From positions 186,001-250,000 of IMG/VR virus record IMGVR_UViG_3300027710_000011: a stretch of DNA of 64,000 bases; one strand, 5' to 3'. Under the pieces are notes generated by a model. The model did no database searches and was not told the origin of the DNA. It saw nothing but the letters and a program-made list of their open reading frames with translations. Of the stretch, positions 28,423 through 33,999 are shown one piece after another (position 1 is the first letter of the stretch; each line of letters opens with the position of its first letter). Both the position numbers and the translations under genes were made by a program.

Positions 28423-29127
28423 ATGAAAAACTCAATCTTGTCTCAAGCTCTGGAGAGTTTGGAGACACCCGTTCCCGCAGCATTGCCACCTGCTACTGAA
28501 CCAGTTGCACCTGCTCCACAAGCAGCCCCTCCCACTCACGTCATCAGTCGTGAGAACACGGACGCTGCTGTTGAGCAAAAGCTCGAAGCCATGAGTCGCG
28601 ACAGTGTCGTGATGAATGCGCCGCTGTCCACCCTCTTCACTCGTGCGCTGAATATTCAATTGGCCAAGAAGAACGTGGTGACTGGCGAGTTCGATGGCGT
28701 TACGCCTGCAGCCACAACTCAAGCTGAAGCCGTTGCGACTGAAAGCCAGGCGCAAGACGCTTACTTCTCCGCAGCAGCCCGCCGAGTCTTCCAAGACACT
28801 CACAAGGTGGAAGAGCGGATTGACATTACGGATCCGGTAAAGCCTGAAGTTCCTGAAAGCTTGGAAACCGGTGGTTCAGGTACAAAGCTGATTGCGCCAG
28901 CCACTCAGGAAGAAACCATCAAGTTCTTCAACTCCAACGACCTGGATGGTTTGGAGCCCAAGTTCGTTTTCTACCGCGACGTTGGCATTAAGACTGACGG
29001 CGTGGTGAAGGAAGACTGGGAAACCCAGAAGATGATTGCTTTGAACGAGCAAAGCAGTGATGCCAATTACGTGGTTGAATCCATCGAAGTGGTGATTCGT
29101 ACTCGCAAGGTTGACATCAAGGACTAA
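28423..29127 (+). CDS. Probable virion head protein with protease-processed acidic propeptide
   Basis: 234 aa, Ala/Pro/Glu-rich; ALE-S and ATE-S sites fit the gp175 S/A/G-x-E cleavage rule. Confidence 0.6.
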   Translation: MKNSILSQALESLETPVPAALPPATEPVAPAPQAAPPTHVISRENTDAAVEQKLEAMSRDSVVMNAPLSTLFTRALNIQLAKKNVVTGEFDGVTPAATTQAEAVATESQAQDAYFSAAARRVFQDTHKVEERIDITDPVKPEVPESLETGGSGTKLIAPATQEETIKFFNSNDLDGLEPKFVFYRDVGIKTDGVVKEDWETQKMIALNEQSSDANYVVESIEVVIRTRKVDIKD

Positions 29128-29140
29128 AAGTCTGAAAAAG

Positions 29141-29168
29141 TAAAGAGGGGGTAAAACCTCTCTTTATG
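29141..29168 (+). terminator. Terminator
   Basis: TAAAGAG(G)GG-gtaaaa-CCTCTCTTTATG. Confidence 0.75.
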
Positions 29169-29403
29169 TTGTCACTTGTAAAACGCTGCTAAGGACCCTA
29201 CAAAGGCCATAGATGAAATAAAAAAGAAAAGTCGAGGGTAGGTAGCTACCCAAATCTGAGTTCAATACAAGCCTTTTTAAAAGGTCACTATGCCAAAAAA
29301 TACTGGCTAGCTTACTAATATAGTTAAAGCTATTTTAACTAAACCTAGTATAATAGGGGGGCCCCAGACCCCCGATAGTATACTAAGAATAATAAAGAGT
29401 ATA

Positions 29404-29445
29404 ATGCGCGTGCGCGCACACATGCGCACGCATACGCGCACGCGT
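29404..29445. repeat. 42-bp perfect alternating purine-pyrimidine tract (Z-DNA-prone)
   Basis: ATGCGCGTGCGCGCACACATGCGCACGCATACGCGCACGCGT. Confidence 0.9.
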
Positions 29446-29492
29446 TCTATAATGAGGGTTTCTTAAAAAGAGAAATTTTTTAAGAGTTAAGC

Positions 29493-29520
29493 GGCTGGGT
29501 AGTAGACCCAGCCTTTTATG
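29493..29520 (+). terminator. Terminator-like hairpin inside the non-coding region
   Basis: GGCTGGGT-agtag-ACCCAGCC-TTTTATG. Confidence 0.65.
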
Positions 29521-29854
29521 CTGAGAAGATGAGATCTTGAAGTTATAGGCTTAGAAAAGGTTTTAAGAGGTCTTAGAGCTATTTTCGTTGCTTAGATGAG
29601 CAACGATGAGTCTGAGAGAAAAGAAAGCCGTATAGACGGTTTAAACGAATCTAGCCAATTGACAGACCAACTACCAGAAAAAGGACTTCGTCCAAAGTCT
29701 TGAGAGATTACCCTCCCCCAAAGCCCCCTCCCGCGAAACCGGGGCGGGGCGGCTTTTGACTTTACTTCCCTTTTCCTTTGTGGAGGTACTCACAACACCT
29801 CTTCGCCGTTCATGAGTGGCGGCAACCTGAAACAACGTTACTGAGGCGAACGAA

Positions 29855-31096
29855 ATGCAAGAAGCAAAGATCAGAGACATCTTCGACGATGTCTGCCGGA
29901 ACGTTGTGGCTGATAAGGCATTGAGCCTGAGGATCCATCGCTATGTCGTGGACTTTATCAACCGCAACAGTGAACACTCCCAATTCTTCGGGGGCAACTT
30001 GACAGGTGTTCAAGTCGTGCGGTTTGTGGAGTCGGACAAGAACCACTGGTTCGACGATATCCTGGACGTTAACGAACATGACTTGCAGGACAAGATCAAC
30101 AAGCTGGCTTGCGTACAAGGCAAGGACGGTGTGCGTCACGTGTCTGGTGACGCTTTGAACCAATCGTGCGTGTGGCTTTGCTACAAGTTCCACAATGCAT
30201 CGAATCTCACCATCGACGAGCGTGCCCAAACCATCCAAGACATCTTGCTGGCTTTGCAGTTCAAATTCCTGACCAGTCGTTTGTTCCGTCACTTCAAGTT
30301 CCCAGCCGACCGCGCTTCGGCTGAGGCTGCGTACGCGCAGTTGTCGAACAAGTATTCGATCAAGATCTACGGTACTTGGTTGAAAGTCCTGGAAGCACGT
30401 TGCTCTGACATCACGGCAAAGACTAGCTCTCACTTCAATGTGATTGCTCGTATGGATGACGACATGGGCGTTGTTCGAATGCTCAATGACATTCAAGGTC
30501 GTCTGCGTGACATGCTCAAGAACATCTTTGGTCAGTTCGTACAGATCAAGGACGCGGGTGAGAAAATCACATCCAGCTCCGGTGTGGTTGACTTTGACGG
30601 CGTGGAAGTGCTCAAGGATCGAAGTAAAGGCTTGGCAACTTACACCAACTACATGAACTCCGTTGTGGGTGACAAGAACTCATTCATTCGTGGTGAGTTG
30701 CTGAAAGTGGTTCAAGACATCTTCCCTTCTGCCCCACCCAAGCACATCGTCAGTGCACTTGAATACATCTCGAACAATTACTTGAAATCTCGTTCCGACG
30801 ATATTGCCAAGTTGATCGAGATGACGATGATTCACAGCTTCACGTACTTGGAGAAGAATCGTCAAACAGTTCAAGCCGGCATTAACTTGCCCAAACTGTT
30901 GGAGCGTTTGCGCGGTGTTTACACATCGTCCCGTTCTACGGATCCTGACTTGATGGATCTTCGTCGGTTTGCAGAAGTCATTGTTCGTAAGTCTGTAGAT
31001 ACACGCACAGATAGCGTCATTGCTTCTGTGCGAACCGCAGTCTTGCTTTACATCGTGTCTCGTGCATACACGATGTGTCATTGGTCCAACGTGTAA
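29855..31096 (+). CDS. Conserved core protein (phiKZ gp32-like)
   Basis: 413 aa; FFGGNLTGVQVVRF segment; position near the tail genes. Confidence 0.7.
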   Translation: MQEAKIRDIFDDVCRNVVADKALSLRIHRYVVDFINRNSEHSQFFGGNLTGVQVVRFVESDKNHWFDDILDVNEHDLQDKINKLACVQGKDGVRHVSGDALNQSCVWLCYKFHNASNLTIDERAQTIQDILLALQFKFLTSRLFRHFKFPADRASAEAAYAQLSNKYSIKIYGTWLKVLEARCSDITAKTSSHFNVIARMDDDMGVVRMLNDIQGRLRDMLKNIFGQFVQIKDAGEKITSSSGVVDFDGVEVLKDRSKGLATYTNYMNSVVGDKNSFIRGELLKVVQDIFPSAPPKHIVSALEYISNNYLKSRSDDIAKLIEMTMIHSFTYLEKNRQTVQAGINLPKLLERLRGVYTSSRSTDPDLMDLRRFAEVIVRKSVDTRTDSVIASVRTAVLLYIVSRAYTMCHWSNV

Positions 31097-31172: not shown

Positions 31173-31586
31173 GTGTTCGCCATGGGTCATTTTCGATTAC
31201 TTAGTCAGCTGCTTCCGAAGGCCATCGAAACTATTCGAGGTGAAAGAAGTCTGATTGAAATCACTGAAGCAAGGGCTCAGATAGAGTCCTTAGTCGCATA
31301 CTCTGTTGAAGGGTATACAGTGACTATCCATTGTCAGGAAAGAAAATACAGGTGCATGTATAAGCGTTGGTTTGTGCCAAACTTCGTGATTAAAACTTAC
31401 GAAGTCTTTGCCACTATCGCTGGGAAAGCACCTGACGTATTGATCGATGCTTGCGCCAGAGACAGGACGTTCCCTCGACTATTGAACTCGTGGTCCAACT
31501 CGTCCAGTCAAAAGGAAGCAGCAATAGAGGCCTTCTTAGACCTCCTACATGCCAGACTGCGTTACGCTCAAAGCACGTCTGGTTAA
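31173..31586 (+). CDS. Hypothetical protein
   Basis: 137-aa ORF followed by a terminator; start uncertain. Confidence 0.5.
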   Translation: MFAMGHFRLLSQLLPKAIETIRGERSLIEITEARAQIESLVAYSVEGYTVTIHCQERKYRCMYKRWFVPNFVIKTYEVFATIAGKAPDVLIDACARDRTFPRLLNSWSNSSSQKEAAIEAFLDLLHARLRYAQSTSG

Positions 31587-31631
31587 GTCGTGAGATACAT
31601 CGGCGCTTGCGCGTCAATTGCTTCAGTGATT

Positions 31632-31683
31632 ATAAAAAGCCAACACCTATCCGGGAACTAACTCGGGTAGGTGTTGGCTTTAT
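31632..31683 (+). terminator. Long terminator hairpin
   Basis: AAGCCAACACCTA...TAGGTGTTGGCTT, 13-bp stem. Confidence 0.8.
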
Positions 31684-31818
31684 TCCGTCACTTTATCTTT
31701 TTTTATTATATACACCAAGCTTATGGTGAATGCGCTGCATCCATGCGGCCATTAAATGGAGAGGTTATGCATCACTTCAAAGATTTTTGTCTTAGAGAGA
31801 AGTTGGAGTAACTAAGTA

Positions 31819-33999
31819 ATGATACTCTTCTTAGACGACTGGAAGAAATATCCAAGAGCAATCATCGACATGAAGACGACGAACACGTCCTTCATTCGAC
31901 TGGCTTCGGTTTATCGCGCAATGGGTATCGAGAACAATGCGTTCTTGCTCGCCCTACTGAATCCAGACTTGCAAGGAGTTGATCCATACTCGCCTGATTT
32001 GACGCTTGAGCAGATGGCGGCGATCAGTTTGGAATGCAAGCACAATCCTTGGTATTTCTTTCGAGAGATTGCTAAGGTCCCTGCTTCGGGCGGTAACGAC
32101 GCAATGCGGCTTCAGGCCAATCGAGGCAATATTGCATTGTTCTGGTTGTTCTTCAATCACATCACGCAATTTCTAATTCAGCCACGGCAGACAGGTAAGT
32201 CTATTAACGTTGACGCGTTGATGATCTTGCTGCTGAACATCATCTGTATTGCTACAAAGATCAACTTGCTGACAAAGGACGACACTCTGCGTCGTGCCAA
32301 CGTTCAGCGGATCAAGGACATGATGGAGGAACTCCCTCCATACCTGTTCCTGAAGGGTCCGAGTGATCTGAACAATACAGAAGAAATTACCATCAACGCG
32401 CTGGGTAACCGTTACACGACTCACGTTCCACAAAGCTCTCCAAAGCGTGCGGATAACATGGGCCGGGGTTTGACTACTGCGGTTATGCATGTTGACGAAG
32501 CACCCTTCCAGGTGAACATTGAGATTGCGTTGAAAGCAGCTCTGCCTGCTATGACTGCAGCTATCGAAGCAGCTAAGCGTGAAATGGCTCCGTATGGAAC
32601 TATCTTCACTACAACGGCTGGTAAGAAGGATGACAAGGACGGCGCTTTCATTTATCGCGAGATGATGGAGTCTGCACCTTGGACTGAGAAGTTCTTGGAT
32701 TGCAAGAACCTTGTAGATCTTGAAACAACTATTCGTACCAATAGCCGAGGAGGTAAGGTTCGAGTTCGTTGCGTCTTCAATCATCGGCAACTGGGTAAGA
32801 CGGATGAATGGATGTTGCGAGCTCTGGAGGATTCCTTCCAGTCTGGCGATTCTGCTAACCGAGACTTCTTCAACATGTGGACGTCCGGCTCTCAGACCAA
32901 CCCGATCCCTATTCACTTGCTCGAGCGCATTGCTGGCTCACGCATGGAGCCTTTGGAAACAGAGATCTCCAGTCAAGACCGTTACATCACGCGCTGGTAT
33001 ATTCCGGCCGATACGATTCATGGCCGCATGGCGAACGGTAAGTTTGTCCTAGTCCTTGATACCAGCGAAGCCGTCGGCAATGACGATATTGGTTTGTTGC
33101 TGATCGATCTGGCTACAACCGAAGTGATTGCGTCAGGTACGTTCAACGAAACCAACTTGATTAAGTTCTCTCGTTGGCTGTTGCAATGGTTCATCCGCTT
33201 TGAGAACATCACCGGTTTGTTGGAGCGACGCTCTACTGGTGGGATGATCATGGACTACTTGATCGTTTACATGATCGAAGCTGGTATTGATCCCTTCAAG
33301 CGCTTGTTCAACACAGTGGTGCAAGACTACCGTGAGAATCACGACAACTTCGAAGAGATTCGTAAACCAATGAATCGTCGCGATCCTCGTATCTACGATC
33401 GCTTCAAGAAGACGTTTGGTTTCTCCACTTCAGGCGGTGACGGTACGTATAGTCGTAATGGACTTTACTCCAGCACACTGATGATGGCTGCTAAGCGTGG
33501 TTGTGATTATGTTTACGACAGTACCCTTATTGACCAGGTGAATGCCTTGATCAATAAGAACGGTCGAGTCGATCACCCGCAAGGCGGACACGACGATATG
33601 GTCATCGCGTGGCTGCTTGGTTTCTGGTTCATGACTAAAGCAGTTAACGTTGGTTTCTACGGTATTGATTCACGACTACTGATGTCTAAGAATCAAGACT
33701 TGTCGAATCCGGCCAGCGTAATACCTACTCAAGATCAAGAGGTCCAAAACGCTCTGCGTGATAAGATCGAAGGTCTGACAGAAGAGCTCGGTAAAGAGCG
33801 TGACAAGTTTGTAGCTCAGCGTTTGGAGCAAGAGATTCGAAGTCTGATGAAATACGTCATCGTAAAAGAAGACGAAATCTACAGCGTCGATGAACTGCTT
33901 AGAACGGCTAAGGAAAAGCGTGTTGAGAAGAAACGCTTTAACAGCTACCAGCAAAGTCCTTATCAAATGACTTCGCTGCAACCAGGTTACTATCGATAG
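31819..33999 (+). CDS. terL: Terminase large subunit (gp25-like)
   Basis: Walker A PRQTGKS, Walker B HVDEAPF, TTTAG, nuclease DTSEA and HDDMVIAWL. Confidence 0.95.
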   Translation: MILFLDDWKKYPRAIIDMKTTNTSFIRLASVYRAMGIENNAFLLALLNPDLQGVDPYSPDLTLEQMAAISLECKHNPWYFFREIAKVPASGGNDAMRLQANRGNIALFWLFFNHITQFLIQPRQTGKSINVDALMILLLNIICIATKINLLTKDDTLRRANVQRIKDMMEELPPYLFLKGPSDLNNTEEITINALGNRYTTHVPQSSPKRADNMGRGLTTAVMHVDEAPFQVNIEIALKAALPAMTAAIEAAKREMAPYGTIFTTTAGKKDDKDGAFIYREMMESAPWTEKFLDCKNLVDLETTIRTNSRGGKVRVRCVFNHRQLGKTDEWMLRALEDSFQSGDSANRDFFNMWTSGSQTNPIPIHLLERIAGSRMEPLETEISSQDRYITRWYIPADTIHGRMANGKFVLVLDTSEAVGNDDIGLLLIDLATTEVIASGTFNETNLIKFSRWLLQWFIRFENITGLLERRSTGGMIMDYLIVYMIEAGIDPFKRLFNTVVQDYRENHDNFEEIRKPMNRRDPRIYDRFKKTFGFSTSGGDGTYSRNGLYSSTLMMAAKRGCDYVYDSTLIDQVNALINKNGRVDHPQGGHDDMVIAWLLGFWFMTKAVNVGFYGIDSRLLMSKNQDLSNPASVIPTQDQEVQNALRDKIEGLTEELGKERDKFVAQRLEQEIRSLMKYVIVKEDEIYSVDELLRTAKEKRVEKKRFNSYQQSPYQMTSLQPGYYR

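What the first reader, a model, noticed from the sequence alone, without database searches (positions are those of the whole stretch)
29349..29453. 42-bp perfect purine-pyrimidine alternation flanked by three regularly spaced TATAAT boxes
Positions 29404-29445 alternate R/Y perfectly and are CG/CA-rich, a strong Z-DNA-forming signature found nowhere else that I saw in the window. TATAAT occurs at 29349, 29400 and 29448 (spacing 51 and 48 bp), two copies directly bracketing the tract. A palindrome (AGTATACT) and a G/C run lie between the first two. This looks like a designed structural element, such as a supercoiling-sensitive switch in a replication origin or packaging site.
Basis: partly seen in the sequence, partly recalled or inferred. 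Interest (0 to 1): 0.7.

Follow-up and report, generated by a model that had tools for sequence, protein, structure and literature searches.

The report
Conserved alternating GC tract, jumbo phage
A unique 42-base stretch of strictly alternating purines and pyrimidines sits in a non-coding region of an uncultivated giant phage; that region is better conserved than the genes around it, so the stretch is a real functional element of unknown role, not chance.

Summary
The 42-nt R/Y run (29404-29445) is the longest in the 276,772-bp phage genome; the next is 17 nt, and about 8e-8 such runs are expected. The only three + strand TATAAT copies in the window lie at 29349, 29400 and 29448.

The tract lies in a 727-bp non-coding gap upstream of a phiKZ gp032-like gene. 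Against an 89%-identical relative the gap is 92-100% identical, while flanking genes are about 70-90%. The tract block 29388-29475 is 100% identical.

A homologous GC-rich alternating tract of 15-42 nt, between AT-rich boxes, occurs at the same place in 10 of 12 related lineages. Sequence and length vary but alternation is kept.

TATAAT#1 is not conserved and belongs to a separate hairpin. Boxes #2 and #3 are the AT-rich ends of a 52-bp imperfect palindrome. No sigma70 -35 element, phage promoter motif, conserved ORF or Rfam family fits.

A simple B-Z model predicts Z-DNA at superhelix density near -0.0375. Hairpin potential is only a by-product of alternation.

The unit is bounded by intrinsic terminators. 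My best guess is the central hairpin of a ~175-nt non-coding RNA. A DNA-level Z-DNA or cruciform switch is nearly as likely. Nothing supports an origin or packaging site.

The parts
29404..29445 (.). 42-nt perfect purine/pyrimidine alternating, GC-rich tract. It holds the near-invariant core GCGTGCGCGCA and the palindrome GTGCGCGCAC, which is unique in the genome.
29400..29451 (.). 52-bp imperfect palindrome: 26-nt arms, 73% complementary, no spacer. TATAAT#2 and the TATA of box #3 form its AT-rich ends.
   Evidence: I2; folds
29388..29475 (.). 88-nt block 100% identical to the 89%-aa relative and to contigs from fish-gut and pond runs
29349..29354 (+). TATAAT#1. It lies in the 5' arm of a separate hairpin (TAGTATA..GGGGG..CCCCC..TATACTA, about 29346-29386) and is not conserved.
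29400..29405 (+). TATAAT#2. It decays to AGTAAT, CAGTAT or TATAAA in relatives.
29448..29453 (+). TATAAT#3, the best conserved box (TCTATAATG, TCTATATAG or TTATATAGTG in relatives)
29324..29336 (+). Conserved AT-rich motif TTAAAGCTATTTT, followed in every close relative by a hairpin of different sequence. Candidate promoter or 5' end of the unit (inferred).
29573..29585 (+). Second copy TTAGAGCTATTTT, followed by the hairpin GTTGCT..AGCAAC, whose loop varies between relatives
29461..29487 (+). A/U-rich hairpin between the tract and the terminator. The hairpin is kept in relatives while its sequence changes.
29493..29519 (+). Intrinsic terminator hairpin plus TTTTATG; 6 of its 8 stem pairs show a change on both sides in at least one relative
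29142..29168 (.). Bidirectional terminator-like hairpin plus CTTTATG that closes the upstream gene
29273..29850 (+). Non-coding region more conserved (0.92-1.00 identity) than the flanking genes (about 0.7-0.9), apart from the variable hairpin at 29323-29397
28423..29127 (+). Upstream gene, 234 aa, no family; weak similarity to FLC9 gp22 and RP12 ORF022
29855..31096 (+). Downstream gene, 413 aa, phrog_2921, homologue of phiKZ gp032

Best explanation
The tract is the GC-rich core of a conserved, single-copy structural module. The module has an AT-rich box, 15-42 nt of alternating CG/CA/TG steps, and a second AT-rich box. It lies inside a terminator-bounded, non-coding transcription unit upstream of the gp032-like and terminase gene block, in one clade of uncultivated phiKZ-like jumbo phages.

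Most likely the + strand is transcribed into a ~175-nt non-coding RNA, about 29340-29517. This RNA would carry a 5' hairpin, the tract hairpin (an 11-bp GC stem plus an apical stem), an A/U hairpin and the terminator. The tract would act there as a very stable hairpin, for example as a protein-binding, processing or stability element.

Shown: uniqueness, conservation, absence of coding, the terminators and the hairpin potential.
Inferred: that the region is transcribed, the transcript's ends, and that RNA rather than DNA is the active form.
For: - Unique and non-random.
- The gap is more conserved than the flanking genes, and the tract block is 100% identical.
- A homologous tract is present in 10 of 12 lineages, down to about 56% aa identity of the neighbouring protein.
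- No conserved ORF. The 20-aa frame starting at 29404 shifts in L011, and other small ORFs are not kept.
- A + strand intrinsic terminator lies 47 nt downstream of the tract, with changes on both sides at 6 of its 8 stem pairs. A second terminator lies upstream.
- Hairpins before and after the tract keep their structure while changing sequence.
- The 181-nt unit folds far better than shuffles (z -6.1).
- RNAalifold keeps an 11-bp tract stem in all six close relatives, and its non-Watson-Crick pairs are G-U on the + strand.
Against: - No expression data.
- No promoter identified. The genome-wide motif ACATATCAC is absent from the gap.
- The tract stem is invariant, so it gives no real compensatory support.
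- Shuffles that keep the R/Y pattern fold as well as the real tract (z -0.7 and -1.0). Pairing between the TATA flanks is no better than with shuffled flanks. Hairpin formation is therefore not shown to be the selected property.
- In the window the - strand folds better (z -8.4).
- No Rfam family matches.
- The second half of the gap shows little covariation.
Confidence: 0.4

Rival explanations
1. DNA-level non-B switch. Under negative supercoiling, for example behind transcribing polymerases, the tract flips to Z-DNA or extrudes as a cruciform. This would absorb superhelical stress and so control melting or protein access at the adjacent AT-rich boxes. It could be a cis-regulatory site, or part of an origin or pac site.
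For: - Alternation itself is the conserved property. Tracts in 10 lineages differ by transitions (105 ts: 27 tv in pairwise counts) and mostly even-length indels (31 even: 6 odd). The rest of the gap shows ts:tv of about 0.7-1.4.
- Hairpin potential adds nothing beyond alternation.
- A SIBZ-like single-run model using Table 1 of PMC3024258 predicts B-Z transition at sigma about -0.0375. No competing site lies within 5 kb, and the threshold is the same in all nine relatives tested.
- Single copy per genome, with AT-rich flanks.
- Z-forming repeats are deletion-prone in bacteria (literature cited in PMC13174585), so perfect retention implies selection.
Against: - The ts/tv and indel counts are partly circular, because in-phase alignments of alternating sequences can only show transitions.
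- An invariant 11-mer core points to sequence-specific rather than purely conformational constraint.
- Transitions-only change is also what RNA-stem evolution through G-U intermediates produces.
- The GC-skew extremes are not at this locus and there are no iterons.
- No z-alpha domain or DNA methyltransferase is found in the genome.
- My model ignores competing strand separation and cruciform formation.
- The topology of phage DNA inside the phage nucleus is unknown.
Confidence: 0.3
2. Sequence-specific binding site (operator-like) for a phage or host protein. The protein would recognise the palindromic core TGCGCGCA / GTGCGCGCAC; alternation and hairpin potential would be incidental.
For: The core GCGTGCGCGCA is nearly invariant at the 5' end of the tract in all lineages, while the rest varies. 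The palindrome is unique in the genome. The 88-nt block is 100% identical, including positions predicted to be unpaired.
Against: No candidate binding protein: the neighbouring proteins have no Pfam or PHROG function. This does not explain why 20-30 further bases keep alternating with different sequences.
Confidence: 0.12
3. An unusually long transcription terminator or insulator hairpin. It would be a variant of the genome's many 'AT arm - GC stem - AT arm + TTTATG' cassettes.
For: The genome carries about 97 matches to CTTTTAT (51) or CTTTATG (46), a minority of them inside coding sequence; most intergenic ones follow a hairpin with AT-rich arms. The tract element has the same layout. The scan calls a terminator-like site on the - strand at 29423-29404 followed by TATACTCTTT.
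Against: No U-run follows the tract hairpin on the + strand. Canonical terminators already lie 47 nt downstream and about 240 nt upstream. Ordinary terminators in this genome are neither alternating nor conserved at 100%.
Confidence: 0.08
4. Tandem promoters: the TATAAT boxes are -10 elements for host sigma70 RNAP or a phage RNAP, and the GC tract is a discriminator or spacer.
For: Three perfect TATAAT lie on one strand within 105 nt. TATAATGCGC resembles the stringent rRNA-type -10 plus GC discriminator; this is my own recollection and was not tested. Box 3 is moderately conserved.
Against: - No -35 element or extended -10; the scan finds 0 sigma70-type promoters in 28900-30000.
- Boxes 1 and 2 are not conserved.
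- TATA-like heptamers are not a recurrent intergenic motif in this genome.
- The recurrent promoter-like motif is T-rich plus ACATATCAC.
- The closest cultured relatives, RP12 and RP31, replicate without host RNAP (PMC5468394).
Confidence: 0.06
5. Neutral compound dinucleotide microsatellite, or a short Arg/His/Thr-rich peptide gene (MRVRAHMRTHTRTRSIMRVS).
For: Indels between relatives are mostly 2, 4 or 6 nt. An ATG at 29404 opens a 20-codon frame with AAAGAG upstream.
Against: The tract is 100% identical where the flanking genes differ by about 20%. The frame is shifted in L011, and the peptides differ in length and C-terminus.
Confidence: 0.03

Closest known systems
Z-DNA-forming (CG)n/(CA)n inserts studied in supercoiled plasmids (Ho/Benham energetics, SIBZ; PMC3024258)
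   Same: Perfect Pu/Py alternation made of 11 GC, 7 AC/GT and 3 AT dinucleotides. The computed B-Z cost is 24.3 + 10 kcal/mol, with a predicted transition near sigma -0.0375.
   Different: This tract is natural, unique in its genome and conserved in a phage lineage. It has an invariant core and AT-rich palindromic flanks. Z formation was not observed here, and no Z-binding protein was found.
Phage and bacterial small non-coding RNAs that end in a Rho-independent terminator
   Same: A terminator-bounded unit without an ORF, several hairpins whose structure is kept while sequence changes, and an A/U-rich segment before the terminator.
   Different: No Rfam family, no mapped promoter or transcript, and the central hairpin is invariant rather than covarying.
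RNase III processing hairpins of T7-like early transcripts (from my own knowledge)
   Same: An intergenic hairpin of about 20 bp with an internal loop, lying between transcription units.
   Different: Purely a resemblance. No cleavage data exist, and the sequence is GC-alternating, which T7 sites are not.
phiKZ-type promoters: AT-rich early motif near -10; late TATG (PMC7598289, PMC8244752)
   Same: AT-rich boxes in a jumbo phage that encodes multisubunit RNAPs. The genome has many hairpin+TTTATG cassettes reminiscent of the phiKZ late TATG.
   Different: The boxes here do not match the genome's recurrent motif ACATATCAC and are poorly conserved.

Membership tests
Z-DNA-forming sequence | Uninterrupted alternating purine-pyrimidine run of at least about 12 bp, dominated by CG and CA/TG steps | tested here: met
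   42 nt: 11 GC, 7 AC/GT and 3 AT dinucleotides
Z-DNA-forming sequence | B-Z transition energetically favoured at physiological negative superhelicity | tested here: met
   My simplified single-run SIBZ-like model gives P of at least 0.5 at sigma -0.0375 in a 5-kb domain, with no competitor site. The model ignores melting and cruciforms.
Z-DNA-forming sequence | Left-handed conformation actually adopted (antibody or Z-alpha binding, topoisomer shift, chemical probing) | not testable with these tools
   Needs wet-lab assays
sigma70-type promoter | -10 hexamer TATAAT | tested here: met
   Three exact copies
sigma70-type promoter | -35 element at 16-18 nt, or an extended -10 TG | tested here: not met
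   0 promoter-like sites in 28900-30000. By inspection no TG lies at -15/-14.
Jumbo-phage virion-RNAP early promoter | Match to the AT-rich motif that recurs upstream of many operons of the same genome | tested here: not met
   The recurrent motif is T-rich + ACATATCAC: about 20 exact copies, all on the - strand, none in genome 215128-215854.
Intrinsic terminator | GC-rich hairpin immediately followed by a U-run | tested here: inconclusive
   No U-run on the + strand. The - strand site 29423-29404 + TATACTCTTT is flagged by the scan.
Curated RNA families (Rfam 15) | Score at or above a family's gathering threshold | tested here: not met
   0 hits in the window. Only sub-threshold noise in 29100-29900.
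Structured non-coding RNA (generic) | Compensatory base changes supporting the helices | tested here: inconclusive
   Terminator stem: 6 of 8 pairs change on both sides. Tract stem: invariant or one-sided G-U changes only. Class-preserving shuffles fold equally well.
Structured non-coding RNA (generic) | Detected transcript | not tested
Replication origin | GC-skew inflection, iterons, AT-rich unwinding element | tested here: not met
   Cumulative skew minimum near 130 kb and maximum near 246 kb, against the locus at 215.4 kb. Only two-copy short repeats. AT-rich flanks are present but short.
pac site | Defined packaging-initiation terminus or coverage step in virion DNA reads | not testable with these tools
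   Only assembled contigs with flat depth were available
Leader peptide or small ORF | Reading frame conserved in relatives | tested here: not met
   The frame shifts in L011, and peptides differ in L009

The most novel reading that the evidence does not exclude
The tract is a conserved Z-DNA (or cruciform) supercoil sensor in a phiKZ-like jumbo phage. Transcription-driven negative supercoiling would flip it, which would gate melting of the flanking TATA boxes. That in turn would control a non-coding transcript, or transcription-primed replication or packaging, next to the terminase module. It would be the first natural, phylogenetically conserved Z-DNA switch described in a bacteriophage.
Probability: 0.2. 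Interest if true: 0.85.

Novelty: new variant of a known kind. Interest (0 to 1): 0.6.

Why it matters
Non-coding DNA that is better conserved than the neighbouring essential-looking genes is rare in phages and marks a function still to be found. This case is easy to test. It is one small, unique module whose two candidate properties, hairpin and left-handed DNA, can be separated by simple sequence swaps. If it acts as RNA, it defines a new phage non-coding RNA family next to the packaging genes of nucleus-forming jumbo phages. If it acts as DNA, it would be a natural, selected Z-DNA or cruciform element in a virus of bacteria, which has long been sought.

Tried and rejected
- Megablast and blastn of the locus against cultured phages found nothing. 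A protein-seeded IMG/VR scan found no relatives.
- An IMG/VR pattern scan with GCGTGCGCG..CGCGTTCT returned only unrelated GC-rich hits.
- Apparent 'tracts' in Burkholderia FLC9 and Ralstonia RP12 lie inside coding sequence of GC-rich genomes, so I rejected them as homologues. PhiPA3, Ea35-70, DT01, Xoo-sp14 and RSL2 have no tract and mostly short gaps.
- My first claim that TATAAT is depleted genome-wide (24 against 140 by base composition) is withdrawn. Dinucleotide shuffles give the observed number.
- AGCTATTTT, AGTATAA, TATAWWG and A-rich+TACT were tested as genome-wide promoter motifs, and none recurs.
- Extension of the stem by the TATA flanks is not above shuffled flanks. Selection for the palindrome beyond alternation is not shown.
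- A methylation-switch idea was dropped because the genome has no C5 or N4/N6 methyltransferase. No z-alpha domain was found.
- tRNA and tmRNA scans found none.
- Small ORFs on both strands of the gap are not conserved.
- Literature searches found no described counterpart.

Full report
**What is there.** The window is positions 186001-250000 of a 276,772-bp viral record from a subsurface metagenome. It encodes a multisubunit RNAP beta subunit, a large terminase and other phiKZ-type proteins. The nearest cultured relatives of the neighbouring protein are Burkholderia FLC9 and Ralstonia RP12/RP31, at only about 47% aa identity.

The finding lies in a 727-bp gap (29128-29854) between two + strand genes. 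One is a 234-aa ORF without a family. The other is a 413-aa phrog_2921 protein, the homologue of phiKZ gp032. The large terminase gene starts 2.4 kb downstream.

- Positions 29404-29445 alternate R/Y without a break.
- The run is the longest in the window and in the genome; the next is 17 nt.
- About 8e-8 such runs are expected. The longest run in 100 Markov-1 simulated genomes averaged 19 and never exceeded 26.
- TATAAT occurs on the + strand only at 29349, 29400 and 29448.
- The total number of TATAAT is what dinucleotide shuffles give. I therefore withdraw my earlier impression of genome-wide depletion; only the clustering is odd.

**Conservation.** Using homologues of the gp032-like protein I fetched syntenic loci from independent assemblies. 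The long non-coding gap, 600-1060 bp, is kept throughout the clade.

Against the relative with 89% aa identity (L004):
- The flanking genes are about 70-90% identical at the DNA level.
- The gap from 29273 to 29850 is 92-100% identical.
- The block 29388-29475 (box 2, tract, box 3) is 100% identical.
- The same conserved islands reappear in the 84% and 79% relatives.
- Contigs from fish-gut and pond runs carry the tract block with at most one listed difference, 29476 T>A just past the block.

A homologous GC-rich alternating tract sits between AT-rich boxes at the same position in 10 of 12 lineages:

| Lineage | aa identity | Alternating run(s), nt |
|---|---|---|
| window and L004 | 100% / 89% | 42 |
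| L009 | 84% | 13+22 |
| L011 | 79% | 15+26 |
| L013 | 68% | 26 |
| L015 | 63% | 24 |
| L016 | 58% | 16+15 |
| L018 | 58% | 19 |
| L144 | 57% | 15 |
| L019 | 56% | 10+15 |

Two GC-rich relatives, L145 and L146, lack the tract. More distant chimalliviruses lack both the tract and the long gap. The core GCGTGCGCGCA is nearly invariant. The remainder changes in sequence and length but keeps alternating.

**The TATAAT boxes.**
- Box 1 reads TATAAC in L004 and is deleted in L009 and L011. In the window it lies in the 5' arm of a separate hairpin, TAGTATA..GGGGG..CCCCC..TATACTA. Relatives carry unrelated hairpins at that place.
- Boxes 2 and 3 are the AT-rich ends of a 52-bp imperfect palindrome, 29400-29451.
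- Box 2 decays in relatives. Box 3 persists as TATAAT or TATATAG.
- No -35 element accompanies any box.
- TATA-like heptamers are not a recurrent intergenic motif in this genome.
- The genome's recurrent promoter-like motif is T-rich plus ACATATCAC, and it is absent from the gap.
- RP12 and RP31 do not need host RNAP (PMC5468394).

The regular triad is therefore not a conserved design.

**Coding and known RNA families.** The 20-codon frame opening at 29404 is frameshifted in L011, and other small ORFs are not conserved. No tRNA or Rfam family matches.

**Transcription context.** The genome carries dozens of cassettes built as an AT arm, a GC stem, an AT arm and then CTTTATGCYGTC. Two of them bracket the unit, at 29142-29168 and 29493-29519.

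The downstream one is a + strand intrinsic terminator, and 6 of its 8 stem pairs change on both sides among six relatives. An ORF-free, conserved stretch that ends in a covarying terminator implies a non-coding transcript.

A conserved AT-rich motif, TTAAAGCTATTTT, occurs at 29324 and again at 29573. Each copy is followed by a hairpin, so it is a plausible promoter or 5' boundary. The 181-nt stretch 29340-29520 folds at z -6.1 on the + strand and z -8.4 on the - strand.

**Hairpin or alternation?**
- RNAalifold keeps an 11-bp tract stem in all six close relatives. The stem is invariant, so it gives no covariation evidence.
- Sequences shuffled within the purine and pyrimidine classes fold as well as the real tract in every lineage.
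- Pairing between the flanks is no better than with shuffled flanks.
- Self-complementarity is therefore a by-product of GC-rich alternation, not a demonstrably selected feature.
- Differences among homologous tracts are transitions and mostly even-length indels. This measure is partly circular. It is also what RNA-stem evolution through G-U intermediates would produce.

**Z-DNA potential.** I used the dinucleotide energies of PMC3024258 in a simplified single-run model of a 5-kb domain. The tract costs 24.3 + 10 kcal/mol and is predicted to flip at sigma about -0.0375. It is the only such site within 5 kb. The homologous tracts of nine relatives behave the same way. This shows propensity only.

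**Origin or packaging site.**
- The GC-skew extremes are elsewhere.
- No iterons are present.
- No methyltransferase or z-alpha protein is encoded.
- Packaging termini could not be tested, because only contigs with flat depth were available.

**Verdict.** This is a real, unique, strongly selected non-coding module with no described counterpart. I rank the explanations as follows:

| Explanation | Confidence |
|---|---|
| RNA hairpin within a small non-coding transcript | 0.40 |
| DNA-level Z-DNA or cruciform switch | 0.30 |
| Sequence-specific protein-binding site | 0.12 |
| Terminator or insulator | 0.08 |
| Promoters | 0.06 |
| Neutral repeat or peptide gene | 0.03 |

The two leading models make opposite predictions for simple tract replacements, so the question is directly testable.

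Noticed in passing
window 29147-29168, 29493-29519 and genome-wide: The genome has 97 matches to CTTTTAT (51) or CTTTATG (46). Most intergenic ones follow a GC hairpin with AT-rich arms and often continue as CTTTATGCYGTCTA. They look like bidirectional terminators fused to a phiKZ-type 'TATG' late-promoter start.
   Followed up: partly
window 467, 5625, 15880, 25410, 46593 (all - strand) and elsewhere in the genome: A recurrent intergenic motif, T-rich + (Y)ACATATCAC, has about 20 exact copies, all on the - strand. It is probably this phage's virion-RNAP early promoter consensus.
   Followed up: partly
window 29711-29740: A C-rich tandem motif, CCCTCCCCCAAAGCC / CCCTCCCGCGAAACC, is conserved across the clade. 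In L016, L018, L019 and L144 its reverse complement (GGGGGTAGGGGG-like runs) lies upstream of the tract instead. It has G-quadruplex/i-motif or anti-Shine-Dalgarno potential. RNAalifold pairs CCUC with the GAGG in front of the gp032-like start codon.
   Followed up: partly
window 29679-29928: Two of the 12 low-share runs from other environments were laid, a coded organism and a drinking-water metagenome. Each holds only a ~230-250-nt contig of this stretch, at over 99% identity, and nothing else of the 3-kb query. The other ten have similar shares (0.05-0.09) but the piece they hold was not checked. This may be an ultra-conserved island spanning the leader and first codons of the gp032-like gene.
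   Followed up: partly
window 29324-29336 and 29573-29585: TTAAAGCTATTTT / TTAGAGCTATTTT: AGCTATTTT occurs at only four places in the genome. Two are in this gap, and each of those is followed by a hairpin.
   Followed up: partly
genome 141.0-142.4 kb (outside the window): A second long stretch has no confident gene. It is the lowest-GC region of the genome (0.30), with two - strand TATAAT, an AAAGCTAT..AGTATAATG arrangement like the one here, and a 17-nt R/Y run. It is a possible alternative origin or regulatory region.
   Followed up: no
window 31586-31819 versus L004:5913-7139: Relatives L004 and L013 carry an HNH-type endonuclease gene just upstream of, and overlapping, the large terminase gene. 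The window lacks it.
   Followed up: no
window 28410/28423: The longest ORFs leave only 12 bp at the divergent junction, whereas gene calls in relatives leave 100-140 bp. The true starts of the 262-aa (-) and possibly the 234-aa (+) ORFs are probably internal.
   Followed up: no
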